Virus record (IMG/VR): IMGVR_UViG_3300010403_000705
Span: 1 to 64,000 of that record
Length of the DNA: 64,000 nt
Strand: one strand, 5' to 3'
This document shows positions 2,854 through 36,368 of the stretch, one piece after another. Below the pieces are notes generated by a model. That model worked only from the letters and a program-made list of their open reading frames with translations, was not told the DNA's origin and made no database searches. The position numbers and the translations under genes are program-made. Every line of letters starts with the position of its first letter. The first letter of the stretch is position 1.

Positions 2854-4749
2854 ATGTCACAACAACGCGTTAAAGAGCTTGAAGATAAAATTATTAAAGC
2901 TCGTCACGATTATTATAATAATCAACCAATAGTTTCAGATAAAATTTATGATGCCTGGGTTGATGAGCTTAAATTATTATCTCCAAATAGTTTAGCAGTA
3001 GTAACAGTGGGTTCACCAGTAATATCTAGTGAATGGAAAAAAGCAAAACATCAAATCCCTATGGGATCTTTAGATAAAGTAAATCTTCCAACTGAATTAG
3101 ATAAATGGGCAAAAGATAATGCGTTAGGAGAAGCTTTATGGGTTGTAGAAAAATTGGATGGACTGAGTATTGAGCTCATTTATGAGCGTGGCAACTTAAT
3201 ACAAGCTATTACAAGAGGAGACGGTATTATTGGTGAAGATATTACTGCAAATGTTATTAAAATGAATGGAGTTTTTAGAGAGTTATATAATTTCTCTACA
3301 AATACTGCAAGTCATTTTAATGGATCTCTTCGTGGTGAAATTATTATGGCAAAGTCTATTCACCGGAAATATTTTGCTGATAAGGCTAATCCACGTAATG
3401 CTGCATCAGGGGTATCTAAAAGGCTTGATGGTATAGGAAGTGAACATCTAAGCATTCTGTTTTACCAAGTATTGGGAGATAAAGATTTTGCGACTGAAGA
3501 AGAGCAATTTTTCTGGTTAACCACACACAAGTTATTAACTCCAAATTTTTGGTTATTTTCTACCTCCGAAGAAGTTAATAAACATTGGAGAACTTATCAG
3601 GATGTTAAACGTAATAATTTGGATTATGATATCGATGGCTTAGTAATTAGAATTAATAATTTAGATGTGCAAGTCGCTTTAGGAGAAAAAGATTTAAGAC
3701 CGAAAGGTGCGATGGCGTTTAAGTTTGATAATGAAGCGAGAGAAACTATTATTCGTGTTATCGAATGGCAAGTTGGAAATAGTGGAAGACTTACACCAGT
3801 AGCTACTATGGATCCAGTTTCTTTAGTTGGGGTATCTGTTAGCAGAGCAAGTTTATATAATTTAGCTTACGTACAATCACTGGCTATAGATGTAGGTGCT
3901 ACAGTTTTAGTTTCGCGTGCTAACGATGTTATTCCTAGGGTGGAAGAGTTAATTAAAGGAACGGGAACAGTTGCAAAGCCGCCCGATAATTGTCCCGCCT
4001 GTAATCATAAGGTAGAAATAATTGGAGAAAATATTCAATGTCCAAATTCTTTGACTTGTCCAACACAAGTGGTAGGTAGAATTAAGAATTGGATTAAAGA
4101 GCTTAATTTATTGGAGTGGGGAGATACTCTTATTGAAAGATTAGTACAATCAGGTAAAGTAACAAAAGTATCTGATTTGTATAAATTATCAATAGATGAT
4201 TTAGCATCTATTGAGAGAATGGGCAAAAAATCTGCTCAAAAATGTTATGATATCTTATGGCAATCTTCTGAGATACCTCTTGAAGTTTTTTTAGGTGCAC
4301 TTAGTATACCTATGATTGGTAGTGCTACAATTAAATTAATTATGCAAGCAGGTTGTGATACACTAGAAAAATTTGGGCAATTACATGATTCTCATTTTGA
4401 ACAAGTGCCTGGAGTTGGACCAATCAAAGCAAAATTTTTGGCGGATGGATTAAAAACCAACCAATCTCTTATTTTAGAATTATTAAACAATGGAGTTAAG
4501 ATTAAGCCTATTGTTATTGGTGCGTTAACTAATAAATCTATTTGTTTTACTGGTTCGATGAATATCAAGAGACCAATCTTGGAGAAAATGGCAATAGATG
4601 CTGGCGCCAGTGTAAAAAATACAGTAGGCAAAGGTCTTACTTATTTAGTTATTGCAGATCCAAATAGCATGAGTACTAAAGCAGTAGTTGCTCGCAAGCT
4701 AGGTACTATTCTTTTATCAGAAAATGATTTTTTACGGATGGTTAAATGA
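2854..4749 (+). CDS. ligA: NAD-dependent DNA ligase
   Basis: KLDG adenylation motif, TRGDG..GED, NPRNAA, Zn finger, HhH, C-terminal BRCT (ICFTG...KARKLG). Confidence 0.97.
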   Translation: MSQQRVKELEDKIIKARHDYYNNQPIVSDKIYDAWVDELKLLSPNSLAVVTVGSPVISSEWKKAKHQIPMGSLDKVNLPTELDKWAKDNALGEALWVVEKLDGLSIELIYERGNLIQAITRGDGIIGEDITANVIKMNGVFRELYNFSTNTASHFNGSLRGEIIMAKSIHRKYFADKANPRNAASGVSKRLDGIGSEHLSILFYQVLGDKDFATEEEQFFWLTTHKLLTPNFWLFSTSEEVNKHWRTYQDVKRNNLDYDIDGLVIRINNLDVQVALGEKDLRPKGAMAFKFDNEARETIIRVIEWQVGNSGRLTPVATMDPVSLVGVSVSRASLYNLAYVQSLAIDVGATVLVSRANDVIPRVEELIKGTGTVAKPPDNCPACNHKVEIIGENIQCPNSLTCPTQVVGRIKNWIKELNLLEWGDTLIERLVQSGKVTKVSDLYKLSIDDLASIERMGKKSAQKCYDILWQSSEIPLEVFLGALSIPMIGSATIKLIMQAGCDTLEKFGQLHDSHFEQVPGVGPIKAKFLADGLKTNQSLILELLNNGVKIKPIVIGALTNKSICFTGSMNIKRPILEKMAIDAGASVKNTVGKGLTYLVIADPNSMSTKAVVARKLGTILLSENDFLRMVK

Positions 4750-9446: not shown

Positions 9447-9477
9447 GAATTCTCACAATAATAAAGAAAGTTAAAAT

Positions 9478-9666
9478 ATGAAGTATTTTTTTACTGAGAT
9501 AAAAAAATTGTTAATAAAGAGTTTTATTATGTACAAATCTTCTAAAAGGTGGGACAAAATGTCAGAAGAAGAAAAAAATTTTACTGAAGCCAAAGATGTA
9601 TATTATGAAGTTGCTGAAGAAGTAAATAATTCATTAAAAATGTTTTGTAATTACAAATATTTATGA
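9478..9666 (+). CDS. hypothetical protein
   Basis: 62 aa ORF. Confidence 0.5.
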   Translation: MKYFFTEIKKLLIKSFIMYKSSKRWDKMSEEEKNFTEAKDVYYEVAEEVNNSLKMFCNYKYL

Positions 9667-9980
9667 TAAATACTATAATATGTATATTTTCAATCTACGG
9701 TTTATCTTTTTTCATTAAAGAAACTGATGGTCCTTGGGGGATTATGAATTATATAAGAAATTTTCTTATAAAAGATGAATTTATAGGTGTTTTCTTTTAT
9801 AAATTATTATCCTGTTATTATTGTGTTGGTTGTCATGCTGGCTATATTATATATTTACTTTATACTCCATATGAAAAATGGACTTTTAGTAATTTTATAT
9901 TATGGACATTGGCGGGTGGCGCCATCAGTTTTATTTTAAATTTAATTGTAGAAAAATTAAGTGGAAATAATGAACAATAG
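9663..9980 (+). CDS. small membrane protein, DUF1360-like
   Basis: Hydrophobic segments, DGPWG and LLSCYYCVGCH. Confidence 0.6.
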   Translation: MINTIICIFSIYGLSFFIKETDGPWGIMNYIRNFLIKDEFIGVFFYKLLSCYYCVGCHAGYIIYLLYTPYEKWTFSNFILWTLAGGAISFILNLIVEKLSGNNEQ

Positions 9981-10359: not shown

Positions 10360-10664
10360 TCAATATTATGTTGTATAACAATAATGGGGTACAAGTCATT
10401 GTAGATGAAAATTTAGATAATTCAAATTGTATTATAAGAACTGATACTTGGAGTATTTTTTATTTAGATGATGATACAATTCATATTTTCAATAAGAACA
10501 ATGAATTAGTGCTGCAATTTGACATGAAATCTGATTCAGATTTAATAAAATATTTAGACATTAAAAATTTGGTTACTCTTGATAATGATAAGATAGTATA
10601 CGCTTTTGATAAATTAATAAACAATAGGATTGAAAAAATTTTTCATCTTAAAGCATTTATATAA
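10356..10664 (+). CDS. hypothetical protein with C-terminal F-x tail; paralog of previous gene
   Basis: YNNNGVQVI...IIRTDTW; ends EKIFHLKAFI. Confidence 0.7.
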   Translation: MINIMLYNNNGVQVIVDENLDNSNCIIRTDTWSIFYLDDDTIHIFNKNNELVLQFDMKSDSDLIKYLDIKNLVTLDNDKIVYAFDKLINNRIEKIFHLKAFI

Positions 10665-10731
10665 TTATCATACTATTTCCCATCGTAGTACATATTTAAT
10701 AAATCATATAAAAGATAATAGGACATAAATT

Positions 10732-12234
10732 ATGAGTGATAAATTAGTTGCGTATTCTGCTGGGGCAGAGCCTCAGTTTCCTGCTAATTTTGATGTGGTA
10801 AAAAGAACTACGCTTAATTATACGGATATTGTAAATAATTCAAATAAATTTTATAATTTAGAAATTCAAGTTGCACCGAGTGGGGAATCTAGAATTTATA
10901 CTAATTATGGTAGGGTTGGTGGCACGATCGCTAGAGAATATCGTATCTGTAAAAATCAAATTCATGCGGAATCCGAATCCGATAAAATTATTAAGTCCAA
11001 AGTAAAAAAAGGGTACGTAGAGGTTAAGTTAGTTAAAGCGGAGATTGGATCAGAGGTTGGAAAAGCAAAAATCGAGTCTTCAAAAATATCTCTAACTGAT
11101 TTAGAAAAAGCTGGTATTAAAATACAAACTGATCAGAAGGATGAATCTATATTGCACCCAGAAGTTCAAAATTTAGTGAGAACTTGGTTCGGTGTAACTG
11201 CTGAATTCGTAGAATTAAACTTAGATACCAAAAAGTGTCCTTTGGGTCAGTTATCTATTGATCAGATTACAAAAGGTAAAAATATCTTAGAAGAGGCTCG
11301 CCAAATCGTACATTCTAAAAAACCAGATCAAATAGAGTTAAATAAATTAACAAATTTATATTATTCCAATATTCCGCACAATTTTGGATATACTAGGATT
11401 AATGCAGATGCTTTACGATTAGATGCCGATGATAAATTAGATAAAGCATTTGATATTTTGGACATTTTTAATGATGCTAAAAATGTCCAAAATGTTATGT
11501 CAAGGAAAAATTCTGTAGATTCTCAATACGTCACTCTTAATACTGATGTGGAGTGGCTCGATCCTAAATCTCCTACATGGCAATGGCTTGATGTGATGTT
11601 GCATAATACAAGAGCTAGTAACCATTCTTTCCTTGGTAAATTAAAAACTCATAAAATTTTTAAAATCAATCGAAAAGGTGAAGAAGAAAGATTCCTTAAG
11701 GTAGCAGAGAAAATTGCTAAAGAATGTGGTAAGCACAACCCTTCTGATGTGTATGCTAAATTAGTTCGTGAGAGACCAGATGTGTCCAAAGAGCTGCAAG
11801 ACCTATATAAAAATGCTAATGTATGTCCTGGATGGCACGGTACGCGTCGAGCCAATATGATTGGTATCACAACCAAAGGACTATTAATTAGACCATCTGG
11901 TGTTACCCATGCTGGTTCCATGTACGGTGATGGCATCTATTGGGCAACAAATAGCACTAAATCAATCAATTACTGTGATGTCAAAGGTTCTTATTGGGCG
12001 CAAGGTAACAATAGAACTGCTTATTTATTTTTAGGTGATGTAGCATTTGGAAAACAAAAAATAGCTAGTGGTTCGCATTTTTATACCAATAAAAATATAG
12101 AACCTCATCATTCAGTTTTTGCTAAAGCTGGTAGTGCAGTTTATAATGATGAATTAATTACATATCATCCAACTGGTCCAAATCAACAACATTGGTTACG
12201 CTACATAGTAGAATTTGAAACACAAGTGAAATAA
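10732..12234 (+). CDS. WGR-domain poly(ADP-ribose) polymerase-like protein (WGR + regulatory helical + ART domain)
   Basis: NSNKFY..YGRVG..KKGY (WGR); PLGQLS..YYSNIPH (regulatory); WHGT, GIYWA, KSINY, NDELITY (H-Y-E triad). Confidence 0.92.
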   Translation: MSDKLVAYSAGAEPQFPANFDVVKRTTLNYTDIVNNSNKFYNLEIQVAPSGESRIYTNYGRVGGTIAREYRICKNQIHAESESDKIIKSKVKKGYVEVKLVKAEIGSEVGKAKIESSKISLTDLEKAGIKIQTDQKDESILHPEVQNLVRTWFGVTAEFVELNLDTKKCPLGQLSIDQITKGKNILEEARQIVHSKKPDQIELNKLTNLYYSNIPHNFGYTRINADALRLDADDKLDKAFDILDIFNDAKNVQNVMSRKNSVDSQYVTLNTDVEWLDPKSPTWQWLDVMLHNTRASNHSFLGKLKTHKIFKINRKGEEERFLKVAEKIAKECGKHNPSDVYAKLVRERPDVSKELQDLYKNANVCPGWHGTRRANMIGITTKGLLIRPSGVTHAGSMYGDGIYWATNSTKSINYCDVKGSYWAQGNNRTAYLFLGDVAFGKQKIASGSHFYTNKNIEPHHSVFAKAGSAVYNDELITYHPTGPNQQHWLRYIVEFETQVK

Positions 12235-12235
12235 T

Positions 12236-12577
12236 TTGGTGAATCCATGGAAAAAAAATATTGTTGGAAAATTAGTTAAAGTACATGTTGTTAAATATAA
12301 AAGTACGGATGAAGTTGCAGGTGTATTCCCCACAAGACAGCAAGCAAATTTTTATTTGAAAGATAATGCAGTTGATAAAGATTTAGAAATTCAATACTAT
12401 GATGCTTTTCAATATGATGGCGATCCAAGGGTTTCACTTTTCGATCCAAAAGCCGTTCATTTTGTTTATCAATTACAAACAGAATATCATTCAGAAGAAA
12501 TACATAGAGAATGGGAAATAAGAAAGATAGCCTTAAATAAATTAACTTCTGAAGAAAGAAGAATTTTAGGTGTATGA
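12236..12577 (+). CDS. hypothetical protein
   Basis: Ends ALNKLTSEERRILGV, a tail common in phage proteins. Confidence 0.65.
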   Translation: MVNPWKKNIVGKLVKVHVVKYKSTDEVAGVFPTRQQANFYLKDNAVDKDLEIQYYDAFQYDGDPRVSLFDPKAVHFVYQLQTEYHSEEIHREWEIRKIALNKLTSEERRILGV

Positions 12578-12884
12578 AACGATGAGAAAACCTATATATC
12601 GAGAAGCTTTACAGTATTTAAAAGAATCGGGCAGTCATTTTGCGAACGGTCCCGATAATGATATGGCTATAGAATTTGTAGAAACTTTGTATGATTTAGG
12701 TGCAAAACAAATAAATGTAGCATTATACGAAGATTTTTATGAAAATGAAGAAATATTTGATGCTGAATTGTTTTTATTTCTACCACCTACTATTTCTATT
12801 GAGGTCATGATGGAAATTGTATGTATGAGACCAGATGAAATATCTCAAGAAGAAGACGGATCAATTAGATTATGGTGGGACTAA
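12570..12884 (+). CDS. hypothetical acidic protein
   Basis: FVETLYDLGA...IRLWWD. Confidence 0.65.
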   Translation: MYETMRKPIYREALQYLKESGSHFANGPDNDMAIEFVETLYDLGAKQINVALYEDFYENEEIFDAELFLFLPPTISIEVMMEIVCMRPDEISQEEDGSIRLWWD

Positions 12885-12888
12885 TAAA

Positions 12889-13254
12889 ATGATTAAAATG
12901 GATCTTACTGAAGAAGAAAGAGAATTAATTCTCGCAAAAAGAGAAAAAGAAGGTTATTATAAACCAAAAAAGGTAGGTTTTTTAAAAGAAGATTTATGGT
13001 ATCTTCACAAATCTTCTTCTGAATGGGCATTATTGATGAGATCATTTCTTTATTCAACCTCAGAAAAAGAAATGTTGATACAAGATATGAATAAATGTTT
13101 TGAATTTATGTTGCCTGCTGGCACTAAATTTTATTGTTATGTAGATAAAAATATTGAACATTGGCAGGGACCAGGACCAGATGATGTATTTGAGTCAATG
13201 ACTACCAGTTGGGCTGAAAAATATCTAATAGATATAAAATCATATGATGAATGA
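12889..13254 (+). CDS. hypothetical protein
   Basis: Start moved to ATG 12889, after the upstream stop. Confidence 0.6.
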   Translation: MIKMDLTEEERELILAKREKEGYYKPKKVGFLKEDLWYLHKSSSEWALLMRSFLYSTSEKEMLIQDMNKCFEFMLPAGTKFYCYVDKNIEHWQGPGPDDVFESMTTSWAEKYLIDIKSYDE

Positions 13255-13316
13255 TTCAGATATTTTTAGATTATGCTAAATAAAAAAATTTACAATATAA
13301 TTGATATTAGGATTTT

Positions 13317-14231
13317 ATGAGTTTAGGAATTTGTTGTCAATATAAAGAATTAAGCGAAAAAGGTATTGTAAATTTATGTGATGAGAAACACTTACTTTTT
13401 GGACAATTTCAAAACGGTAAATATTCAAACATTAGAATTGAACAAACGTGGGAACATAATAGCATTAGTTTGTTAAATATTATAAAAAGAATTCATAATG
13501 AAAAAGTGAAAGTATTTAGAATTTCATGTGGTATTTTCCCACTGTATGATTGTGTCTCTCATTTACTTTACAATTCTCAATCCATAAAAGATGTATTAAA
13601 AGATATAGGTAGTTTTATAAAAACTTCTGGGATAAGACTGACTACTCATCCAGATCAGTTTGTAGTACTTTCTTCAAATAGACCAGAGGTAATAGCTAAG
13701 TCTAAAAATATATTGCAACATTATGGTTGGGTATTTGACCAGATAGGTTTAAATCAAAATCCTTTTAATCCTATTAATATTCATGGAGGTGTTAGGAACA
13801 ATCATAACATTTTAATAGATTCTATTAAAACTTTACCAATAGAGGTAAAAAGTCGTTTGACATTAGAAAATGATGAGAGTTCTTACAATGTTTTAGATTT
13901 ATATAAAATATATGAAGAAACTGGCGTTCCAATTTGTTGGGATTCCCATCATCATAGTTTTAATAACGCCTCACTATCTAATGAAGAGGCTTTAGATATA
14001 AGTAAAAATACATGGGACATAGTTAAACCAATAACACATTTATCTAATACAGACCCGTCCTTGCAAAAAGGTTCTTTTATAGAAAGGAGAAAACATTGTG
14101 ATTATGTACACTATATTCCAGAGTGTCAGAGATTAGCTAACAATACTGATGAAATAGATATAGAAATGGAATTCAAAATGTCTAACCTAGCGGTGTTCAA
14201 AGCCATGCGCGACTTTGATTTAAAATTGTGA
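13317..14231 (+). CDS. uvsE: UV damage endonuclease
   Basis: FRIS, HPDQFVVLSS, NIHGG, RLTLENDE, DSHHH, H.DY. Confidence 0.92.
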   Translation: MSLGICCQYKELSEKGIVNLCDEKHLLFGQFQNGKYSNIRIEQTWEHNSISLLNIIKRIHNEKVKVFRISCGIFPLYDCVSHLLYNSQSIKDVLKDIGSFIKTSGIRLTTHPDQFVVLSSNRPEVIAKSKNILQHYGWVFDQIGLNQNPFNPINIHGGVRNNHNILIDSIKTLPIEVKSRLTLENDESSYNVLDLYKIYEETGVPICWDSHHHSFNNASLSNEEALDISKNTWDIVKPITHLSNTDPSLQKGSFIERRKHCDYVHYIPECQRLANNTDEIDIEMEFKMSNLAVFKAMRDFDLKL

Positions 14232-14270
14232 AATATATCATTAAATTTTCCTTCATGAAAGGATGCTGAA

Positions 14271-14744
14271 ATGATAGAAGTAATTAGTGGGAATATTTTA
14301 GAATGCAAAGAAAGATATATTGCACATCAATGTAACTGTTTAACACAACATTCTGCCGGAACTGCTAAAAATATTTTTGATAAGTATCCTCATGCTAATA
14401 CTTATAAATCAAGAAGCGAACCAAGTAAATTGTCCTCAATAGAGATATTAGGAGATGGTATTGATAACAGATTTATAATTAATATGTATGCCCAATATTA
14501 TCCTGGCAAACCCAAATATCCAGAATCTAAATTAGATGGCACAATTGCGAGACAAAAATATTTTTATCAATGTTTATTACAGATATCTAAAATTCCTAAT
14601 TTGGAAAGTATTGCGTTTCCTTATAAAATTGGTTGTAATTTAGGCGGTGGAGATTGGAATTATTATTATGGTGTATTAAATAATTTTGCTATTTTTGTTT
14701 ATAATAAACATAATACAAAAGTTTTTTTATATAAAACTTTTTGA
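14271..14744 (+). CDS. macrodomain (ADP-ribose binding/hydrolase)
   Basis: GNIL..IAHQCNC...GTA...IAFPYKIGCNLGGGDW. Confidence 0.9.
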   Translation: MIEVISGNILECKERYIAHQCNCLTQHSAGTAKNIFDKYPHANTYKSRSEPSKLSSIEILGDGIDNRFIINMYAQYYPGKPKYPESKLDGTIARQKYFYQCLLQISKIPNLESIAFPYKIGCNLGGGDWNYYYGVLNNFAIFVYNKHNTKVFLYKTF

Positions 14745-14751
14745 TTTTTAT

Positions 14752-14988
14752 ATGAGATGTCGAGAAATAAACCCCAAAACATTGGCATCCTGCACATATT
14801 CGTCTTTGTGCAATAAGCGTGATGCTCGTCAACATATTGGAACAGATGGTTTGAGCTGGCGCACAGTTGGCATGGTTCCACATTGCACTTGTAATGGTCA
14901 TGGATATAGTTCATTCGGAACAGGGCAACGTGTTGTGTGTCAATGTCATAGCGCCACAAAGTCCCATCAACCAAGTGCAGTAAAATAG
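14752..14988 (+). CDS. small Cys/His-rich hypothetical protein
   Basis: MRCRE...CTCNGHG...VVCQC; fits gene spacing on + strand. Confidence 0.55.
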   Translation: MRCREINPKTLASCTYSSLCNKRDARQHIGTDGLSWRTVGMVPHCTCNGHGYSSFGTGQRVVCQCHSATKSHQPSAVK

Positions 14989-15008
14989 TTAAAAATGAAA
15001 GTCAATCT

Positions 15009-15365
15009 ATGCGTAAACCCTTAGAAATATTTTTTGATGAGGAAGGTAACCTATTAAATAGAGTTTATAATCCTATTTATCATAATAGTGGCTACCAGTA
15101 TAAAAAAGAAGATAATTCTGTATTTTTTGATAAGTTAGAATATGTTGATTATATGTCTGCTGGTAAAGGCGGAGATTCTAAAATAATATTTAAATCTCTC
15201 AATTCTGGAAGAACATATTATATGTTTATTTCGGATTTTCATGATGTATTGGTCAATAAATTATTTGTTAATAATGTAATAGACAATAGATTCACTTTTT
15301 GTAAGAGGGGATCTTCACAAGGTATTAAAGTAATTAAGGAGAAAAATAATGAAGCAATTAGATGA
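15009..15365 (+). CDS. hypothetical protein
   Basis: 118 aa; FTFCKRG. Confidence 0.65.
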   Translation: MRKPLEIFFDEEGNLLNRVYNPIYHNSGYQYKKEDNSVFFDKLEYVDYMSAGKGGDSKIIFKSLNSGRTYYMFISDFHDVLVNKLFVNNVIDNRFTFCKRGSSQGIKVIKEKNNEAIR

Positions 15366-15786
15366 GTTAGTATTGGAAACAATTCAAAATTTTGTAGAAA
15401 ATGGTATGTTATTCACGGCTTTAGATGTGAGTAATTGTGTAAAGAACGCTTTACCTTTTGCCCGACATCGCGAAGTAAGAGATCTAGTACGTTCTTTTTT
15501 TCAAACAGAAATAGAACCTGCTGGCTATGCACGTACCCCAATTAATGTAATTTTAAGTGATGGATCTTCAGCTAATGCAATACTTTATCATCCACTAGCT
15601 GACTCATGGGATTTGGATGTCAAATATGACACGCAAAAAAGAACTCAATCTTCCGCTATCCCCACTAAGAATGGTGTGACTACTGTGATTACAACTCCAA
15701 CACCGCCAGTTTCAACCCCACCTTCAAATAGAGATGTCTGGAATAATCTATTTCAATCACAAACATCCTTATTTCCAAACAGATAA
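15349..15786 (+). CDS. hypothetical protein
   Basis: AAGGAG SD; FTALDVS..HREVR; Pro/Thr-rich tail. Confidence 0.7.
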   Translation: MKQLDELVLETIQNFVENGMLFTALDVSNCVKNALPFARHREVRDLVRSFFQTEIEPAGYARTPINVILSDGSSANAILYHPLADSWDLDVKYDTQKRTQSSAIPTKNGVTTVITTPTPPVSTPPSNRDVWNNLFQSQTSLFPNR

Positions 15787-15790
15787 ATTA

Positions 15791-16357
15791 TTATGTTTTT
15801 GTTTTATCCGAGCTGCTAGCCGTTGGCGGGATGTAATCTTCTTTTTCGTTTTGTAATCTATCTTCGATAGATGTCTCTGTTGGGGTGCTAGTTAATAAAA
15901 AGTTATGTGCAGAATTAATTAAGGCTATTAGTTTAGTTAAACTTTCCACACGAGCCTGGGTAAAACCTTTTCTAGGAATAAAATCTACCTCATTTTCTTT
16001 TAAAAATTGCTGTATATTATTATTCAAAGAAGTAATAGTAGATCGGAAAGATTTAGAAAAAACATAATTAACTATACGTTGCAAACTTTCATATGGATAT
16101 TGATCATCAAATCTCTTAAAATAATCTAATAAATTATGGTAAAGAGTACTAAACTCTTTGAGTATGTAAGAATCAATTCCCTTAATTCTAATAGACATAT
16201 ATTCGCCGCTCATTTCATTTAACAAAGCTCGAAAATCTCTCTTAAATTGTTCAAAATACATATTTAATTTTTCTGCTTTCATTATTTGTTCATGATTAAA
16301 CATAACAGTTTTTTTGGCAAACTTGTGTGCTAGTTCTACTATTTTTTTGTGTGACAT
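15791..16357 (-). CDS. hypothetical helical protein
   Basis: 188 aa, GAGG SD on - strand. Confidence 0.7.
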   Translation of the reverse strand: MSHKKIVELAHKFAKKTVMFNHEQIMKAEKLNMYFEQFKRDFRALLNEMSGEYMSIRIKGIDSYILKEFSTLYHNLLDYFKRFDDQYPYESLQRIVNYVFSKSFRSTITSLNNNIQQFLKENEVDFIPRKGFTQARVESLTKLIALINSAHNFLLTSTPTETSIEDRLQNEKEDYIPPTASSSDKTKT

Positions 16358-16388
16358 ATTTATACCTCTTAAAACCTACAAGTTTAAT

Positions 16389-16967
16389 ATGAAAATATTG
16401 AATACAATACAAGAATTATTATATTGTCCTTTATGCCAAAATTGTGGTGAAATATATGAAATTTCATCTGCCACTAAAAATTTTTTTATTAAATCATGGT
16501 ATCAAAACAATAATAATTTAAAGATTTGCCTTGCGTATCGTTATTCAGATAACATACAAAATGATATAGAATTAGAAGTTTATATAAACGGCAAAGATAA
16601 TACATTAAAATTTGATGAAACAAAAATTCAATCTTGTCAGGCATTTTTGGATGATGTTATATTAGATTGCTGCGTGTATTGCAAGAAATGTGATAATAAT
16701 TATATTAATTGTACTATTACCATTAATAGTAAAAATAAAGAAATTATTTATCATTTATATAAAAGAAGAATATGTTTATTTGCAGAAGATAATGTTGAAT
16801 ATAGGATATCTTTACTATATTACCTAAAATCTATATTGATTTTAAGAAATGATGTTTTATCTGGACCGTTGAATAATAAAATCATTCAGCTTCCATTAAT
16901 TGAATTGGATTTTTCTCGACCACGAATTGTAATTAATAAAATTAAAATATTATTATTATTTAGTTAA
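16389..16967 (+). CDS. hypothetical CxxC protein with C-terminal F-x tail
   Basis: CPLC, CKKC; ends NKIKILLLFS; start moved to ATG 16389. Confidence 0.7.
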   Translation: MKILNTIQELLYCPLCQNCGEIYEISSATKNFFIKSWYQNNNNLKICLAYRYSDNIQNDIELEVYINGKDNTLKFDETKIQSCQAFLDDVILDCCVYCKKCDNNYINCTITINSKNKEIIYHLYKRRICLFAEDNVEYRISLLYYLKSILILRNDVLSGPLNNKIIQLPLIELDFSRPRIVINKIKILLLFS

Positions 16968-16978
16968 TACAGGAATAT

Positions 16979-17182
16979 ATGGCAACGTTTTTCGAAGCAC
17001 ACCAAGTAAGAATGTTACTTAAAATGAAACTTTCTAGTTACTCTTGGTATAATTGGAGCGCAGTAGTTACTGAATATGATGGTTATTCTGTTTTGATAAA
17101 TGTAAAAAAAATCAATAATGCTGTTAAAAAAATTATTGCACCTGTTGTTAATGGTGTAAGTATAAAACTGGAAATAGAATGA
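16979..17182 (+). CDS. hypothetical protein
   Basis: 67 aa, AGGA SD. Confidence 0.65.
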   Translation: MATFFEAHQVRMLLKMKLSSYSWYNWSAVVTEYDGYSVLINVKKINNAVKKIIAPVVNGVSIKLEIE

Positions 17183-17252
17183 AATTCCCAATTTATGAAT
17201 AATCTGTCTCAGAAGAATTATTAAATTGGATTAATAAATTAAGAGGTGATTT

Positions 17253-17939
17253 TTGAAAGTTGTAGCTATAAGTGATACTCATGAAAAACAAGACGAAATA
17301 ACAATACCCGAATGTGATATTTTGATCCATAGTGGCGATATTACAAATAAAGGTTCGTTAACTGGTTTATATAAATTTTGTGCTTGGTTTAAAGAACAAC
17401 CGGCTAAGCACAAAATTATTATTTATGGCAATCATGAATTAGGGTTTTCTTTTGGACCTAAGAGAGAAGAAGCGTTAAATACTCCAAAACAATTTGGTAT
17501 TATATATCTTGAAAATAGTCAAGTTGTAATTGATGGATTAAAAATATATGGTTCACCCATTACCCCTTTTTTCTACAACTGGGAATGGAATGTTCATCGA
17601 GGTAAAGAAATAGCCAAGAAATGGGCACTAGTTCCTGATGATACTAATGTGTTAATTACTCATGGACCTCCATATGGGATTTTAGATCTTATAGATACTA
17701 ATCATTATACTACAAGTGAGTCTAAATCATCACTTATCTTAGAGAGAGATTCTCATCAAGGCTGTGAAGAATTAAGGAAAAAAGTTGATCAATTAACTGA
17801 TTTAAAACTTCATGTGTTTGGGCATTTACATTACCAGGGTGGTCAGCAATTAACATTAAATAATAAAATATTTGTCAACGCTGCAATTTGTAATGATAAG
17901 CACCAAGCAATACGTACACCTCAAGTGATTGAGATATAA
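17253..17939 (+). CDS. metallophosphoesterase (MPPED/239FB-like)
   Basis: ISDTH, HSGD, GNHE, LITHGPP, HVFGHLH. Confidence 0.92.
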   Translation: MKVVAISDTHEKQDEITIPECDILIHSGDITNKGSLTGLYKFCAWFKEQPAKHKIIIYGNHELGFSFGPKREEALNTPKQFGIIYLENSQVVIDGLKIYGSPITPFFYNWEWNVHRGKEIAKKWALVPDDTNVLITHGPPYGILDLIDTNHYTTSESKSSLILERDSHQGCEELRKKVDQLTDLKLHVFGHLHYQGGQQLTLNNKIFVNAAICNDKHQAIRTPQVIEI

Positions 17940-17944
17940 ATGAC

Positions 17945-18193
17945 ATGGGAGTGGTTGCATACACTGAGTGTATAGGATGTAGTCGTGCCGGACGAGCTTA
18001 CACAGATACTAATTTTATATATGAATGTGATAATTGTAAAATATATCATATAAATAATAAGCTTAAGAAATCTATGCAACAGGTGTGGTGGATAAGATTT
18101 TTATACTGGCTTATTGATAAAAAACCAGTTACTTATAACAAGAATAACTGTGAAATACTTTTCAAAGAATTAAATGAAAATAATGCCGAATAA
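17945..18193 (+). CDS. hypothetical CxxC protein
   Basis: CIGC/CDNC. Confidence 0.55.
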   Translation: MGVVAYTECIGCSRAGRAYTDTNFIYECDNCKIYHINNKLKKSMQQVWWIRFLYWLIDKKPVTYNKNNCEILFKELNENNAE

Positions 18194-18208
18194 ACAGGAG
18201 AATCACTG

Positions 18209-18553
18209 ATGAACGTTAAACCTAAAGAGATTTTTGTTAATTTGCCAATTGCATTAACATTTAAAGATGATCACGAAATACCTACCTTTGCTGCTACTAT
18301 TAATACTATTATTCATGGTAAAGTAAAAGTAAAATGTGAGACGGTTGGATCTATTAATGGACAATATGTAGGATTATTTTATCTTCAAAGAAATCATGAA
18401 TATCAAGCAATAAGAGAGTCATTTCTTAATTTAATCGAATCTGAAGAAATAAAGTCTCCAACATGTCCACATCCTAATCCAATGACATTAGAGCAGATAG
18501 GAGACAATGACTTATTTTACTATCTTGAAACAGTAGGTAAAACTGATGAATGA
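18209..18553 (+). CDS. hypothetical protein
   Basis: AGGAG SD, 114 aa. Confidence 0.7.
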   Translation: MNVKPKEIFVNLPIALTFKDDHEIPTFAATINTIIHGKVKVKCETVGSINGQYVGLFYLQRNHEYQAIRESFLNLIESEEIKSPTCPHPNPMTLEQIGDNDLFYYLETVGKTDE

Positions 18554-18839
18554 GAATATAATATATACAATTTTATATTTTTGCTTGTGCTTGTGCTTTT
18601 TATTGTTTTTATTGTTTTACTTGCATTTTAAGGTTAAATCTAAATTGACTAGGTTACAAACATGTTTGAGTTTAATATTTCATGATTGGGATGCCACATT
18701 GGCTATGTGGCATCAGATAAATAAACAACAAGCGCTCTCTCAAGAGAAAGATGTTTCATCTTTATTTGAAGAAGTTTTGCGTAACATTTGTCTAAAAGAC
18801 CGCAATGCAAGGTTGGAAGAAGTTAATAATATTTTATGA
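18546..18839 (+). CDS. hypothetical protein with N-terminal TM helix
   Basis: Long hydrophobic N-terminus. Confidence 0.6.
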   Translation: MNENIIYTILYFCLCLCFLLFLLFYLHFKVKSKLTRLQTCLSLIFHDWDATLAMWHQINKQQALSQEKDVSSLFEEVLRNICLKDRNARLEEVNNIL

Positions 18840-19141
18840 AATGCAGATTTTGTAATTCTGAAATGAAAACTACCTATTTTCATAGCGAGATAAATTCATG
18901 TAATAATCATAAAACAATAAAAGTCCGTTTTAAAACTAACAAGTATGGGGACAGGTGGATTGTTTCAAATAATAATTATAGGTTAGTTTATTGGAGTGAT
19001 CGCACACTTCTACAAAAATATAATCCTAATGCAGATTCGCCTTTGAATACTTATGAATTAGTTAAGAAATTTGATTTTGAACCAAATTTTTCTCCAGAAG
19101 AATTTAACGAAAAACTTAAAACAATTTTGGTATTTTTATAA
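18836..19141 (+). CDS. hypothetical CxxC protein with C-terminal F-x tail
   Basis: MKCRFC; ends EKLKTILVFL. Confidence 0.7.
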   Translation: MKCRFCNSEMKTTYFHSEINSCNNHKTIKVRFKTNKYGDRWIVSNNNYRLVYWSDRTLLQKYNPNADSPLNTYELVKKFDFEPNFSPEEFNEKLKTILVFL

Positions 19142-19147
19142 ATAATT

Positions 19148-19477
19148 ATGATTATTGCTTTCACATTAGGGTCAACTAAAAATTATAACGAATCTTTACT
19201 GGCAGATCGAGAAACCAAGAAATGCGGAAAATCCGAGGATTATGATGGTGGTTGGGTTTGGAAATCTGAGAAAGAAGCTATAGAATTTTTACATTCTAGC
19301 GATTTTCTTAAGGTTGATTGGGGAGATGGTAAAAGTCGCAACCCAAATAATTTTAGTGTATATGGCGTAATTATTAATAATTGGGAAAAAGATACTTATT
19401 GTAGCGACAAAGATAATCAATTTCACTTATTGATTGATGCTAAAATAATAACATTACAAGATAGAAATTCAATATGA
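19148..19477 (+). CDS. hypothetical protein
   Basis: YDGGWVW..FSVYGV...W. Confidence 0.65.
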   Translation: MIIAFTLGSTKNYNESLLADRETKKCGKSEDYDGGWVWKSEKEAIEFLHSSDFLKVDWGDGKSRNPNNFSVYGVIINNWEKDTYCSDKDNQFHLLIDAKIITLQDRNSI

Positions 19478-19968
19478 TTGTAGCATTTACTGGGCACAGA
19501 CCTGATAAATTAGGGGGATATGATTTGCCCAATCCAATTTATATTAAAGTATGTCAAAATATTGCAGAACATCTTAAACTACTAAAGCCAGATAAAACTA
19601 TCTCTGGTATGGCATTAGGAGTAGATCAGTGGGCAGCATATATATCTTACAAACTAAGAATTCCTTTTATCGCTGCCATTCCTTTTGAAGGTCAGCAAAC
19701 TAGATGGCCAAGAAAATCACAAAATACCTATATTAAACTTCTTAATTTAGCTTCTGAAGTTGTAGTGGTGAGTCCTGGCGGATATTCTCCTGATAAAATG
19801 CAAATTCGAAATAAATGGATGGTAGATAATTGTGATAAATTAATTGCAGTTTGGGATGGTTCTGCGGGTGGTACAGGTAATTGTGTAAAATATGCTCAAT
19901 CTAAAAAGAATACAAATGATATTTTATATATTAATCCTAGCTTGACAATTTGCCATGAGAATGTATAG
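19474..19968 (+). CDS. SLOG-family protein (YspA/DUF1273)
   Basis: AFTGHRP, SGMALGVD, RNKWMVD, WDG..GGT. Confidence 0.9.
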   Translation: MIVAFTGHRPDKLGGYDLPNPIYIKVCQNIAEHLKLLKPDKTISGMALGVDQWAAYISYKLRIPFIAAIPFEGQQTRWPRKSQNTYIKLLNLASEVVVVSPGGYSPDKMQIRNKWMVDNCDKLIAVWDGSAGGTGNCVKYAQSKKNTNDILYINPSLTICHENV

Positions 19969-19969
19969 T
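19942..19969 (+). promoter_or_regulatory. sigma70-like promoter
   Basis: TTGACA-N16-TATAGT upstream of 19989 and the tRNA. Confidence 0.5.
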
Positions 19970-19988
19970 GTATATACAGGAATTTAAA

Positions 19989-20138
19989 ATGACAAAATTA
20001 ATAACAATATTATTAGTATTAAGCATCATGGGATGTCAATCTAGCAGACGTACCGAACAAAAAATGGAGATTATTGTCAAACTTGTATTAGTAGAAAATG
20101 AATGCGTAATTCCCATGAAATGCGCATTAGAAGAATGA
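19989..20138 (+). CDS. small putative lipoprotein (49 aa, not in ORF track)
   Basis: MTKLITILLVLSIMG-C lipobox-like signal; AGGA SD. Confidence 0.55.
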   Translation: MTKLITILLVLSIMGCQSSRRTEQKMEIIVKLVLVENECVIPMKCALEE

Positions 20139-20181
20139 TCTTTGCACAGATCCTATTAATAATAGTATATGATCTGTGAAT

Positions 20182-20267
20182 GGGCGTGTGGCGGAATGGC
20201 AGACGCACCGGCTTCAAACTCCGGCACCTAACTAAGTATGTGGGTTCAAATCCCTCCATGCCCACCA
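20182..20267 (+). tRNA. tRNA-Leu(CAA)
   Basis: Acceptor GGGCGTG/CATGCCC, A73+CCA, loop TTCAAAC, long variable arm, TTCAAAT T-loop. Confidence 0.88.
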
Positions 20268-20286
20268 TTTTATTATATTGGGTATT

Positions 20287-20742
20287 ATGAATTTGCAAAA
20301 AAATTTGATTATTAGAGTTAAAAATTTTAATAGCATATGTAATGATGTTATTTTGATGAAGAGTTTAAGAAAATTAACTCTTCATCATTTTTCTGGAATG
20401 AACTATGAATTAAATAATTTTGAAAAACTTGCTAAAATTCGAAATGTAAAAGCACAAGTCTTAATGGCTTATTTAAATGACGAATTAGTCGGTTGGTCTC
20501 TTTTGTCCAAAGAGCCTAGTAATTTTTTATTTGGAAAATCTTTGAAGACTTATGATCCATCCTATGGTATGTTATTTCAAATCTATATTGCGCCACTACA
20601 CCGACGAAAAGGTATTGGATCGGAGTTACTAAAGGTCGCGCGACGTAAAGCTAGTCCATATAGATTATGTTTTTGTCCTTGGAATAACGCAAGTACTAAG
20701 TTTTATAGCAATTTTAATTATCATTGGAATATAAGTTTATGA
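20287..20742 (+). CDS. GNAT-family acetyltransferase
   Basis: IYIAPLHRRKGIGSELL acetyl-CoA motif A; N..S.KFY. Confidence 0.8.
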   Translation: MNLQKNLIIRVKNFNSICNDVILMKSLRKLTLHHFSGMNYELNNFEKLAKIRNVKAQVLMAYLNDELVGWSLLSKEPSNFLFGKSLKTYDPSYGMLFQIYIAPLHRRKGIGSELLKVARRKASPYRLCFCPWNNASTKFYSNFNYHWNISL

Positions 20743-21224
20743 TTAAGTTTTATTCAATACATGGTACATATGCGGGATTTTCTAATTTTTCTCATCACCC
20801 AATAACTTTAAAAAATAAGATTTGGAAAACCTCTGAACATTATTTTCAGGCGCAAAAATTTGCGGGAACTTTTTTAGAGTCAGCTGTAAGAAGATGTAAA
20901 GGAGCTAGTGATGCTGCTCGTATGGGTAGAGATAGAAATAATCCTTTGCGACGTGATTGGGAAAATGTAAAAGATAATGTAATGAGGAAAATAGTATTAG
21001 CTAAATTTTCTCAACATGAAGATTTGAAAAAATTATTGCTTTCTACTGGTAACGAACAATTGGTAGAGCATACAGAAAAAGACAAATATTGGGCAGACGG
21101 AGGAAATGGAAGCGGTAAAAATATGTTAGGAATTATTTTAATGGAAGTAAGAAGAGCCTTAAATTCTCCAGCAGAAATGCAAAAATATATAGATAAATTT
21201 AATCTGGAATCAGAATTATATTAA
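20739..21224 (+). CDS. NADAR (YbiA-like) family protein
   Basis: FSNF, TSEHYFQAQKF, AKFSQH, D.YWADG, GKNMLG.ILMEVR. Confidence 0.93.
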   Translation: MIKFYSIHGTYAGFSNFSHHPITLKNKIWKTSEHYFQAQKFAGTFLESAVRRCKGASDAARMGRDRNNPLRRDWENVKDNVMRKIVLAKFSQHEDLKKLLLSTGNEQLVEHTEKDKYWADGGNGSGKNMLGIILMEVRRALNSPAEMQKYIDKFNLESELY

Positions 21225-21260
21225 TATCTTGATATAAGACTATAAATAATAGTCTTATAT

Positions 21261-21348
21261 ACCAATGTGGCGTAAACGGCTAGCCGCGGCAGTCTTAGAA
21301 GCTGTTGGGAGAAATCCCGTGTAGGTTCGAATCCTATCATTGGTACCA
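21261..21348 (+). tRNA. tRNA-Leu(TAG)
   Basis: Acceptor ACCAATG/CATTGGT, A73+CCA, loop CTTAGAA, GGGA-GAAA-TCCC variable arm. Confidence 0.92.
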
Positions 21349-21355
21349 AAGAATC

Positions 21356-21973
21356 ATGAAAGATTTATTAGAATCATTAATTCAAAAATCTGTTAGAGAT
21401 ATTCAAATTCAAGAAGATAGAAGAATTACTCGATTGCTTAATAAGACAATAGGTAATGTAAAAATGGAAGTAAGTATACATCAATGGTCTTTAGGTTATG
21501 TGCTTATTGGATCTGAACATAATGATTTATTTGCGGTAGAACTAGGTAATGATATTAATGAATGTTATAGAAATTTTTATAATAGATGGTCCAAATTACC
21601 AGGTCCCTATGAAATAGAAGAGCGTAAAAATTTTCAAATAGTTGATAAGGTGATTTCATCCATGGAATCTGGAGTTATGAATGCATCTTTAAAAATAAAT
21701 TATAAAAGTCATCCTTTTAGTACACCTATTAGATATTTGGTCTGGGAAACTTTATTAAACACTGCACCTGGTGAAACTATTTCTTATAAAGAAATTGCTA
21801 ATAAAATTGGAAATCCTAAGGCTGTTCGCGCTATAGGTTCAGCATGTCGAGCCAATCCATTTGCTATTATTATTCCCTGTCATAGAGTAATAAAGAGTGA
21901 TGGAACATCTGGTGAATATCGTTGGGGTATAGATCTTAAAAGAAAATTGTTAGATAAGGAAAAGTCAATCTAA
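21356..21973 (+). CDS. ogt: methylated-DNA-protein-cysteine methyltransferase
   Basis: GETISY..IA...PKAVRAIGSAC..NP..IIPCHRV; start moved out of the tRNA. Confidence 0.9.
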   Translation: MKDLLESLIQKSVRDIQIQEDRRITRLLNKTIGNVKMEVSIHQWSLGYVLIGSEHNDLFAVELGNDINECYRNFYNRWSKLPGPYEIEERKNFQIVDKVISSMESGVMNASLKINYKSHPFSTPIRYLVWETLLNTAPGETISYKEIANKIGNPKAVRAIGSACRANPFAIIIPCHRVIKSDGTSGEYRWGIDLKRKLLDKEKSI

Positions 21974-33271: not shown

Positions 33272-33284
33272 GAAAGATAAACAT

Positions 33285-36357: not shown

Positions 36358-36368
36358 ATTGAGAATGT

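What the first reader, a model, noticed from the sequence alone, without database searches (positions are those of the whole stretch)
10732..21224. Phage-encoded PARP with its own candidate erasers (macrodomain, NADAR) and NAD-related genes
The protein has a PARP1/2/3-like WGR + regulatory + ART layout with an intact H-Y-E triad. Within about 10 kb are a macrodomain (14271), a SLOG (19474) and a NADAR (20739); NadA (58744) and an NAD-dependent ligase are also in the window. Inference: a writer/eraser ADP-ribosylation cycle. It may signal DNA breaks together with PNKP-like, LigA and UvsE proteins, or counter DarT-type and NAD-depleting defences.
Basis: partly seen in the sequence, partly recalled or inferred. 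Interest (0 to 1): 0.62.

Follow-up and report, generated by a model that had tools for sequence, protein, structure and literature searches.

The report
Huge-phage PARP with PARG and macrodomain
A 433-kb soil phage carries a real PARP1-3-type ADP-ribosyl transferase among DNA-repair genes, and its genome also holds a classic PARG eraser, so a full ADP-ribose write/erase cycle is plausible; phage PARPs have already been noted in the literature.

Summary
ORF 10732-12234 is a WGR + regulatory + catalytic PARP. Its H369, Y403 and E474 are invariant in 120 relatives. ORF 14271-14744 gets no Pfam hit but folds as a macrodomain of the SCO6735/BT1257/TARG1 class. SLOG (YpsA), NADAR, UvdE, LigA, two PNKP-like genes and NadA are also real.

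New points:
- The same genome, outside the window, encodes a bacterial-type PARG with an intact GGG-X8-QEE signature and a DraG/ARH-type hydrolase. PARG is in all four complete clade genomes and ARH in 10 of 11 relatives' records.
- LigA, a small membrane protein, PARP, a variable 0.1-2 kb slot and the macrodomain keep this order across 17-19 related huge-phage loci. The slot often holds a UV-lesion nickase, either UvdE or the unrelated Pyr_excise.
- Two unrelated PARP phages place an ATP-dependent DNA ligase beside or one gene from PARP.
- NADAR and NadA are not tied to PARP. The window's NADAR is a YbiA-type xenolog at a different site. The closest complete relative has no NADAR, and NadA is in only 2 of 4 complete genomes.

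Verdict: a break-sensing PARylation cycle is the best reading, and it is untested. The erasers are PARG, ARH and the macrodomain. NADAR and SLOG more likely serve counter-defence. This is a new member of a known kind.

The parts
2854..4749 (+). NAD-dependent DNA ligase LigA with a C-terminal BRCT domain. It lies 4-8 kb upstream of PARP in 18 of 19 related loci.
   Evidence: Pfam DNA_ligase_aden 6.7e-39, OB, HHH, BRCT 1.7e-7. Synteny.
9663..9980 (+). Small hydrophobic (membrane) protein, weakly DUF1360-like. It lies 0.3-1.5 kb upstream of the PARP start in all 19 related loci. Role unknown.
10732..12234 (+). PARP with WGR, helical regulatory and ART domains. Catalytic H369, Y403 and E474 are present. 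The WGR motif reads Y59-G60-R61. A helical insert of about 40 residues (323-365) sits in the ART domain.
12236..13254 (+). Three small ORFs of unknown function in the variable slot between PARP and the macrodomain. They have no family match and are not conserved in relatives.
13317..14231 (+). UV-damage endonuclease UvdE/UvsE in the variable slot. Eight relatives carry the unrelated pyrimidine-dimer glycosylase (Pyr_excise) in the same slot.
   Evidence: Pfam UvdE 2.6e-41. NCBIfam UvsE 3.7e-45, which is below that model's cut-off..
14271..14744 (+). Stand-alone macrodomain of the ALC1-like class, SCO6735/BT1257 type. It keeps N22, Q75 and G126/G127, the equivalents of SCO6735 N27, Q85 and G128.
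   Evidence: PMC9411070.
19474..19968 (+). YpsA-family SLOG protein, conserved 7-10 kb downstream of PARP in 14 relatives.
   Evidence: Pfam YpsA 2e-16.
20278..20742 (+). GNAT acetyltransferase whose end overlaps the start of the NADAR ORF. Conserved downstream of YpsA in 9 of the 19 related loci.
20724..21224 (+). YbiA-subfamily NADAR (first ATG at 20739). It is a xenolog of the NADAR that follows the macrodomain in most relatives.
21305..21973 (+). Protein with an O6-methylguanine-DNA methyltransferase DNA-binding domain. It adds to the DNA-repair context but was not found in relatives' flanks.
   Evidence: Pfam DNA_binding_1 1.8e-30.

Best explanation
The window is the first 64 kb of a 433-kb soil huge-phage genome. 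It carries a vertically conserved PARP1-3-type enzyme (WGR, helical regulatory domain, H-Y-E ART) inside a block of DNA-repair genes. The genome also encodes a bacterial-type PARG and an ARH, both outside the window.

Proposed mechanism:
1. Nicks or breaks in phage DNA are bound by the WGR domain. They could come from UvdE or endoV-type incision at UV lesions, from replication or recombination intermediates, or from host nucleases.
2. Binding releases autoinhibition by the helical domain. The enzyme then uses NAD+ to ADP-ribosylate itself, other proteins or DNA ends.
3. This marks or protects the break until the phage ligase seals it.
4. PARG (G000:C1:398164-398994) trims the chains. The ARH (422034-422948) and the SCO6735/TARG1-type macrodomain, which follows PARP after the variable slot, remove the remaining mono-ADP-ribose and reset the system.

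Shown here: gene identities, catalytic motifs, conservation and gene order. Inferred, not shown: DNA-dependent activation, poly versus mono activity, the targets, and which hydrolase acts on which product. NADAR, SLOG and NadA are not considered part of this cycle.
For: - PARP domains and triad. The whole-length model's best PDB matches are PARP1 and PARP2 WGR-CAT fragments bound to DNA breaks, E about 1e-22.
- PARG: Pfam PF10021 7.9e-48, signature GGGFLSGAIAQEE, T. curvata PARG 3sig 7e-53, TIGR02452 at 261 bits. It is present in all four complete clade genomes: G000, G001, G011 and G012.
- ARH: 1.4e-73 in the own genome and in 10 of 11 relatives' records.
- Gene order LigA, membrane ORF, PARP, variable slot, Macro in 17-19 loci. 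The slot varies from 96 bp to 2 kb, so the order persists despite gene turnover.
- The slot holds a UV-lesion nickase of one of two unrelated families in 10 of 18 genomes.
- PARP lies next to DNA ligases of a different family in two unrelated phages. In LR756511 the ATP-dependent ligase is the next gene and an ARH lies 4 kb downstream. In Cellulophaga phi4:1 the ligase is one gene away.
- A third lineage, G018, has both a WGR-PRD-CAT PARP and a PARG.
- SCO6735, the characterised relative of the macrodomain, removes ADP-ribose from both protein and DNA (PMC9411070).
- Bacterial WGR-PRD-ART PARPs make PAR in vitro, and their partner PARGs reverse it. HaPARP needs DNA for activation (PMC8120803).
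Against: - There is no biochemical or expression evidence. No RNA run holds the locus.
- Synteny within one clade largely reflects shared descent. L002/L020 and L012/L013 appear to be duplicate records.
- Independent lineages are few, and no background rate for ligase adjacency was computed.
- PARG lies roughly 45-76 kb from PARP, not in an operon with it.
- Five of six other PARP phages lack PARG, and one complete PARG-bearing huge phage lacks PARP.
- H-Y-E does not guarantee polymer synthesis; human PARP3 has the triad but is a mono-transferase (established knowledge).
- The Trp of the WGR motif is Tyr here.
- The PARP model has only moderate confidence, pLDDT 72, and is poor over residues 375-400.
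- The macrodomain's relatives also cleave DarT2-type thymidine-ADPr, which fits a counter-defence role equally well.
Confidence: 0.5

Rival explanations
1. The macrodomain, NADAR and SLOG are counter-defence enzymes that work independently of PARP. The SCO6735/DarG-like macrodomain would strip thymidine-ADP-ribose (DarT2 type) from phage DNA. The NADAR would strip guanine-ADP-ribose (DarT1 type). SLOG, macrodomain and NADAR could also degrade ADP-ribose-derived immune signals. This rival concerns the nearby 'erasers' and can be true together with the best explanation for PARP, PARG and ARH.
For: - SCO6735 cleaves DarT-made T-ADPr and rescues cells from DarT (PMC9411070), and the macrodomain keeps its key residues.
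- Every phage NADAR tested removes G-ADPr from DNA, and several neutralise DarTG1 (PMC11257639, PMC11125620).
- A chimallivirus DarG2-like protein is reported to act as an anti-defence factor (abstract of PMC13309987, seen).
- Macro and NADAR are adjacent in 14 relatives.
- Macro, NADAR and SLOG co-occur and share neighbourhoods in many DNA viruses, whether or not an ART is present (PMC9503650).
- NADAR is found in 5 of 6 other PARP phages but always far from PARP.
- NADAR is dispensable in the closest relative.
Against: - The macrodomain stays next to PARP through slot turnover, with a gap of 96 bp in L009. That is unexpected for an unrelated function.
- The window's NADAR is YbiA type (Glu). 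E. coli YbiA, its closest solved relative, did not protect against DarT1 in vivo (PMC11125620).
- The host is unknown, so whether it has DarT cannot be checked.
Confidence: 0.35
2. PARP is a host-takeover effector. Like T4 Alt, ModA and ModB, it would modify host proteins (RNA polymerase, the translation apparatus or defence proteins), here with chains of ADP-ribose. PARG, ARH and the macrodomain would limit collateral modification of phage proteins or set the timing.
For: - This role was proposed for jumbo-phage PARPs in PMC7824862.
- The gene sits in a block of auxiliary and tRNA genes, not structural genes.
- ARTs are common in large phages (PMC9503650).
Against: - The WGR and autoinhibitory helical domains are hallmarks of nucleic-acid-break-activated PARPs, not of constitutive toxins (PMC4081085, PMC8120803).
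- The recurrent neighbours are ligases, UV nickases and end-healing enzymes, not takeover genes.
Confidence: 0.12
3. The macrodomain clears ADP-ribose-1''-phosphate produced by Tpt1/KptA during RNA repair, acting as a Poa1p-like phosphatase. This would link it to the window's RNA-repair genes (PNKP, Rnl1, RlaP) and not to PARP.
For: - Poa1p is the top structural match.
- PHROG 335, labelled 'phosphatase', matches at 3.6e-20.
- The window has an RNA-repair cluster.
Against: - No Tpt1/KptA is found in the genome, while the control genomes ring.
- Rnl1-type ligation leaves no 2'-phosphate (established knowledge).
- By sequence, the profile matches BT1257 and SCO6735 better than Poa1p.
- The macrodomain is 20 kb or more from the RNA-repair genes but next to PARP.
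Confidence: 0.05

Closest known systems
Bacterial PARP-PARG systems (Herpetosiphon aurantiacus HaPARP/PARG, Clostridioides difficile CD160 CdPARP/PARG; PMC8120803)
   Same: Same WGR + PARP_reg + PARP architecture with a catalytic Glu. The partner is a bacterial-type PARG with the GGG-X6-8-QEE signature. The biological role is also unknown in those systems.
   Different: Here the system is in a huge phage. PARG lies 45-76 kb from PARP. There are extra ARH copies and a TARG1/SCO6735-type macrodomain next to PARP. The WGR motif reads YGR, and the ART domain has a helical insert of about 40 residues.
Human PARP2/PARP3, the minimal WGR-HD-ART DNA-break sensors (PMC4081085)
   Same: Same domain order and H-Y-E triad. 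The best whole-length fold matches are PARP1 and PARP2 bound to DNA breaks. The eraser set has the same logic: PARG, ARH3 and TARG1.
   Different: Only 21-25% identity. There is no N-terminal extension or zinc fingers. Activation by DNA is untested, and HPF1 was not searched for.
PARPs already annotated in cultured phages (Klebsiella vB_KpM_FBKp34, Xanthomonas XacN1, Cellulophaga phi4:1) and noted in PMC7824862, PMC9503650 and PMC11662467
   Same: WGR (with or without PRD) plus a catalytic domain with invariant H, Y and E. phi4:1 also has a DNA ligase one gene away.
   Different: Those genomes have no PARG or ARH. Their PARPs are shorter (383-428 aa) and share only about 33-43% identity over the catalytic domain.
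SCO6735 (S. coelicolor) and BT1257 macrodomains, ALC1-like class alongside TARG1 and DarG (PMC9411070)
   Same: Macro fold. The Asn, the Gln at the TARG1/DarG lysine position and the phosphate-loop Gly are conserved, within motifs of the form IAHxCN ... AQ ... IGCxLxGGxW.
   Different: The sequence match is marginal (E 1.4e-5 to 0.015, profile only). Pfam Macro is not reached. The protein is phage-encoded and adjacent to PARP.
E. coli YbiA and phage anti-DarT1 NADARs (AdfN/gp30.3; PMC11125620, PMC11257639)
   Same: NADAR fold. It is close to E. coli YbiA (E 4.7e-48) with the LVEHTE strand conserved.
   Different: It is the Glu (YbiA) type, not the His type of T4 AdfN or the Asp type of DarT1-linked NADARs. 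It is not orthologous to the clade's macro-adjacent NADAR.

Membership tests
DNA-dependent PARP (PARP1-3 / bacterial PARP type) | WGR domain at the N-terminus | tested here: met
   Pfam WGR 2.3e-13, residues 26-98. This region of the model has pLDDT 86-93.
DNA-dependent PARP (PARP1-3 / bacterial PARP type) | Helical regulatory (HD/PARP_reg) domain before the ART domain | tested here: met
   Pfam PARP_reg 1.9e-20, residues 139-264. It aligns with the PARP1 HD.
DNA-dependent PARP (PARP1-3 / bacterial PARP type) | ART domain with the H-Y-E triad | tested here: met
   H369, Y403 and E474 are invariant in 120 relatives and 3 cultured-phage PARPs. H and Y align to PARP1 and PARP2 at high confidence. 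E aligns only in a weak local alignment.
DNA-dependent PARP (PARP1-3 / bacterial PARP type) | Trp of the W-G-R motif | tested here: not met
   The motif is Y59-G60-R61, invariant in the clade. XacN1 and phi4:1 have Y and FBKp34 has F. An aromatic residue is kept, and the consequence is unknown.
DNA-dependent PARP (PARP1-3 / bacterial PARP type) | Activation by DNA breaks, and synthesis of polymer and not only mono-ADP-ribose | not testable with these tools
   This needs an enzyme assay. A PARG in the genome is only indirect support for polymer synthesis.
Bacterial-type PARG (outside the window, G000:C1:398164-398994) | PARG_cat_microb/TIGR02452 match and the GGG-X6-8-QEE signature | tested here: met
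   PF10021 7.9e-48. TIGR02452 at 261 bits against a cut-off of 50. Signature GGGFLSGAIAQEE. 3sig at 7e-53.
Macrodomain, ALC1-like class (SCO6735/BT1257 subtype) | Macro fold | tested here: met
   AF2 pLDDT 92. Foldseek probability 1.00 to Poa1p, nsP3, TARG1, DarG and BT1257, with TM 0.62-0.74.
Macrodomain, ALC1-like class (SCO6735/BT1257 subtype) | Reaches the Pfam Macro (PF01661) threshold | tested here: not met
   No hit at E 0.01. Only 4 of the 120 listed homologues carry a precomputed PF01661 hit.
Macrodomain, ALC1-like class (SCO6735/BT1257 subtype) | Equivalents of SCO6735 Asn27, Gln85 and Gly128 | tested here: met
   The profile alignment to 5e3b and 2fg1 places N22, Q75 and G126/G127 at those positions. 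N22 and G126 are invariant, and Q75 and G127 are at least 90% conserved. Residue roles are taken from PMC9411070.
NADAR, YbiA subfamily | NADAR domain over threshold with Glu in the last strand | tested here: met
   PF08719 at 125.5 bits against a cut-off of 35.1. TIGR02464 at 136 bits against 73.7. LVEHTE is aligned identically with E. coli YbiA. The subfamily rule is from PMC11125620.
DarT-linked antitoxin or AdfN-type anti-DarT NADAR | Asp (DarT1-linked) or His (gp30.3) at the distinguishing position, or a neighbouring DarT | tested here: not met
   The residue is Glu. No DarT was found in the genome, but the control genomes were silent, so that absence is uninformative.
SLOG, YpsA family | PF06908 over threshold | tested here: met
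   60.9 bits against a cut-off of 27.7.
Phage NAD+ synthesis module | A pathway able to make NAD: NadA with NadB and NadC, or NAMPT/NadV with NMNAT | tested here: not met
   NadA is present, but there is no QRPTase_C and no NAPRTase/NAMPT. There is only one weak cytidylyltransferase-like ORF. NadB was not tested. NadA is in 2 of 4 complete clade genomes.

The most novel reading that the evidence does not exclude
A clade of soil huge phages runs its own eukaryote-like, PAR-based DNA-damage response. A break-activated PARP would mark nicks made by phage UV nickases, help the phage ligase reach them (possibly through LigA's BRCT domain binding PAR), and be reset by phage PARG, ARH and a TARG1-like macrodomain. 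This would be the first PAR signalling pathway shown in a bacterial virus, and it would give a simple system for finding out what prokaryotic PARPs are for.
Probability: 0.3. Interest if true: 0.75.

Novelty: new member of a known kind. Interest (0 to 1): 0.5.

Why it matters
[quoted passage not shown] This clade has a conserved PARP and a full eraser set (PARG, ARH, TARG1-like macrodomain). PARP sits beside ligases and UV nickases, and that pairing recurs in unrelated phages with different enzyme families. Together these give a concrete, testable hypothesis: nick sensing during repair of phage DNA. The work also separates genes that travel with PARP from genes (NADAR, SLOG, NadA) that merely occur nearby. 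Culturable PARP phages exist for testing, including Klebsiella FBKp34, Xanthomonas XacN1 and Cellulophaga phi4:1.

Tried and rejected
- Megablast of 10732-14744 against GenBank phages found no match.
- A single-sequence PDB search with the macrodomain gave only weak RNase III hits (E about 0.01). I treat these as chance, because the family profile and the fold both point to macrodomains.
- The 422-aa radical SAM gene in the PARP-Macro slot of three relatives was considered as a possible spore-photoproduct lyase. NCBIfam places it among B12-binding radical SAM enzymes, so the idea was dropped.
- The promoter and terminator scan of 9400-21500 found no more sites than shuffled sequence, so it says nothing about operon structure.
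- TAG recoding was considered because of the CTA-anticodon tRNA. Standard-code frames already cover about 95% of the genome, so there is no sign of recoding.
- Eukaryote-type PARG (PF05028) and DarT (PF14487) gave no match, but the control genomes were silent, so both results are uninformative.
- The scan of bacterial and archaeal genomes found only two loci. One is a 6.4-kb contig binned to a 'Candidatus Berkiella' MAG (67% identity, probably phage DNA) and the other a distant Thioploca MAG hit. No host was inferred.
- The sequencing-run search found only soil and rhizosphere DNA runs and no RNA.

Full report
**Context.** The window is bases 1-64000 of a 432,844-bp IMG/VR virus record, which CheckV rates 97% complete. 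The record appears to be cut from a 447,666-bp contig. GC content is about 30%. Almost all genes lie on the + strand. The window holds 9 tRNA genes and a tmRNA. The only runs that hold this DNA are soil and rhizosphere metagenomes, and none is RNA. No GenBank phage is close at the DNA level.

**Observation check.** ORF 10732-12234 has WGR, PARP_reg and PARP catalytic domains, all above Pfam cut-offs.
- It aligns from WGR to the catalytic domain with human PARP1 and PARP2 fragments, E 1.8e-29 and about 1e-25.
- WHGTR and GDGIYWA align with the PARP1 His and Tyr motifs.
- The YNDELITY segment aligns with the PARP2 NYNEYIVY segment that holds the catalytic Glu, but only in a weak local alignment.
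- H369, Y403, Y414 and E474 are invariant in 120 homologues and in three cultured-phage PARPs.
- The WGR motif itself reads YGR.
- The AF2 model has moderate confidence, pLDDT 72. The WGR domain is good, and residues 375-400 are poor.
- The model's best PDB matches over the whole length are PARP1 and PARP2 WGR-CAT fragments on DNA breaks.
- A segment of about 40 residues (323-365) has no counterpart in PARP1 and is predicted to be helical.

The 'macrodomain' at 14271-14744 has no Pfam hit, but other evidence identifies it:
- It matches PHROG 335, labelled 'phosphatase', at 3.6e-20.
- JGI names many of its 285 homologues O-acetyl-ADP-ribose deacetylase.
- The family profile hits BT1257 at 1.4e-5 and SCO6735 at 0.015.
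- The AF2 model (pLDDT 92) is a macro fold.
- In the profile alignment it keeps the residues that PMC9411070 found essential in SCO6735. These are N22 for Asn27, Q75 for Gln85 (the position of the TARG1/DarG lysine) and G126/G127 for Gly128.

SCO6735 hydrolyses both thymidine-linked DNA ADP-ribose and protein ADP-ribose (PMC9411070). UvdE, YpsA-SLOG, GNAT, NADAR, an MGMT-like gene, LigA with BRCT, two PNKP-like genes, Rnl1, RlaP and NadA are all confirmed.

Scans of the whole genome found two more ADP-ribose hydrolases.
- A bacterial-type PARG lies at 398164-398994 (PF10021 7.9e-48). It carries the signature GGGFLSGAIAQEE. It matches the Thermomonospora curvata PARG structure at 7e-53 and TIGR02452.
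- A DraG/ARH-type ADP-ribosylglycohydrolase lies at 422034-422948 (1.4e-73).

No NAMPT/NAPRTase, no NadC and no Tpt1 were found.

**Relatives.** The PARP has more than 120 full-length homologues at 65-84% identity, on contigs of up to 490 kb. It is therefore a conserved gene of a huge-phage clade. I compared 19 related loci. L002/L020 and L012/L013 look like duplicate records, so about 17 loci are independent.
- LigA lies 4-8 kb upstream in 18 loci.
- A small membrane ORF lies 0.3-1.5 kb upstream of PARP in all 19.
- The macrodomain lies 1.6-3.5 kb downstream in 17 of the 18 loci that have downstream sequence.
- A NADAR follows the macrodomain in 14 of these, and L003 has it without the macrodomain.
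- Further downstream come a metallophosphatase, YpsA and GNAT.

The interval between PARP and the macrodomain is a variable slot of 96 bp to 2 kb. It holds UvdE in the window and in L011. In 8 loci it holds a pyrimidine-dimer glycosylase, which belongs to an unrelated family with the same substrate. In 3 loci it holds a B12-radical SAM gene. PARG is in all four complete clade genomes, and ARH is in 10 of 11 records, often in two copies.

**Which 'erasers' travel with PARP.** The macrodomain, PARG and ARH do. NADAR does not.
- The window's NADAR is a YbiA-type protein, E 4.7e-48 to E. coli YbiA, with LVEHTE conserved.
- It is only 34-42% identical to the clade's macro-adjacent NADAR and sits at a different site, after GNAT.
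- The closest complete relative, G001 (PARP 81% identical), has no NADAR at all.

NadA is found only in G000 and G001. It cannot make NAD without NadB and NadC.

**Independent lineages.** Six other PARP-bearing phage records were searched whole.
- PARG is in 1 of 6 (LR756511).
- ARH is in 2 of 6. In LR756511 it lies 4 kb from PARP.
- NADAR is in 5 of 6, but always 40 kb or more from PARP. This is weak evidence, because about half of medium and jumbo phages carry a NADAR and only about 5% of jumbo phages carry an ARG (PMC9503650).
- In LR756511 the gene after PARP is an ATP-dependent DNA ligase.
- In Cellulophaga phi4:1 an ATP-dependent ligase is one gene away.
- In LR756500 PARP is followed by an R2K ATP-grasp gene, an RNA ligase and an HD-kinase.
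- A further complete huge phage, G018, has both PARG and a WGR-PRD-CAT PARP. Another, G015, has PARG without PARP.

**Interpretation.** The architecture, the conserved triad and the genome-level PARG/ARH/macrodomain set support a reversible ADP-ribosylation system. The recurrent neighbours also point the same way. They are DNA ligases of two families in three lineages, and two unrelated UV nickases in the same slot. The most likely trigger and site of action is therefore nicks and breaks in phage DNA, as for PARP2, PARP3 and HaPARP (PMC4081085, PMC8120803). This remains an inference, because no activity, target or expression data exist.

The macrodomain could act in two ways. It could be the terminal eraser, like TARG1, or it could be an anti-DarT2 enzyme. 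Its frequent adjacency to a NADAR favours a shared role on DNA-linked ADP-ribose. Its persistence next to PARP favours a PARP link. Both may be true. NADAR and SLOG fit the known, PARP-independent pattern of ADP-ribose-processing genes in large phages (PMC9503650) and the demonstrated anti-DarT1 role of phage NADARs (PMC11257639).

**Novelty.** Phage PARPs are already annotated; the FBKp34 record lists WGR, regulatory and catalytic domains. They are also discussed in PMC7824862, PMC9503650 and PMC11662467, and the last of these proposes a PARP/LigA repair role in jumbo phages. Bacterial PARP-PARG pairs are known as well. In the papers I searched I did not find three things: the full eraser set in one phage clade, the PARP-macrodomain linkage with a UV-nickase slot, and PARP-ligase adjacency across lineages. 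I classify this as a new member of a known kind, of moderate interest.

**Limits.** The comparisons rest on few independent lineages and no background model. The distance from PARG to PARP across the record ends is uncertain, because the record was trimmed. The host is unknown.

Noticed in passing
window 58637-58710: A tRNA with anticodon CTA (amber suppressor; ARAGORN labels it tRNA-Pyl) lies directly upstream of NadA. TAG is the rarest stop, ending 64 of 603 long frames. Reading TAG through adds little, so there is no sign of genome-wide recoding.
   Followed up: partly
window 55645-55997: A phage-encoded tmRNA with tag peptide ANDNAFVPMAQAA. The window also has 9 tRNA genes, including three tRNA-Leu genes interleaved with the SLOG/GNAT/NADAR/MGMT genes.
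   Followed up: no
window 32120-42059: An RNA-repair cluster: RlaP-type nucleotidyltransferase (32120-33271), two PNKP-like kinase-phosphatases (37024-37956 and 38423-39385) and a T4 Rnl1-type RNA ligase (40818-42059).
   Followed up: no
window 34201-36357: A 718-aa ORF with a LAGLIDADG homing-endonuclease hit (residues 254-305) upstream of a weak AAA ATPase hit (residues 446-497). It may be an intein-bearing ATPase.
   Followed up: no
window 12235-14270 and the same slot in L002, L011, L016, L018, L020-L022, L025: The slot between PARP and the macrodomain holds either UvdE or the unrelated pyrimidine-dimer glycosylase. Two enzyme families for the same UV lesion have replaced each other at one position.
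   Followed up: yes
window 4746-5603: A radical SAM protein most similar to RlmN/Cfr rRNA methyltransferases, well below their cut-offs, lies directly after LigA. It is found in only four relatives.
   Followed up: partly
L002 15609-16412, L003 15181-15957, L033 8903-9799: An R2K-clade ATP-grasp gene lies a few kb downstream of PARP in clade relatives. It lies directly after PARP in the unrelated huge phage LR756500. None was detected in the window itself.
   Followed up: no
whole record G000 (window = its first 64 kb): IMG/VR labels this and related 430-480-kb records 'provirus'. The record is about 15 kb shorter than the 447,666-bp contig that carries the same PARP. This is probably over-trimming of a huge phage rich in bacterial-like genes, not a real integration.
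   Followed up: no
L054 (JBFWUT010000077.1, 6.4 kb): A short contig binned into a 'Candidatus Berkiella' MAG encodes a PARP 67% identical to this one. It is likely phage DNA mis-binned into the MAG, and is not usable as a host clue without more evidence.
   Followed up: no
window 25816-27414 and 30910-32043: A DUF2201 metallopeptidase/VWA-like protein and an adenylosuccinate synthetase (PurA, 2.7e-103) are encoded in the window.
   Followed up: no
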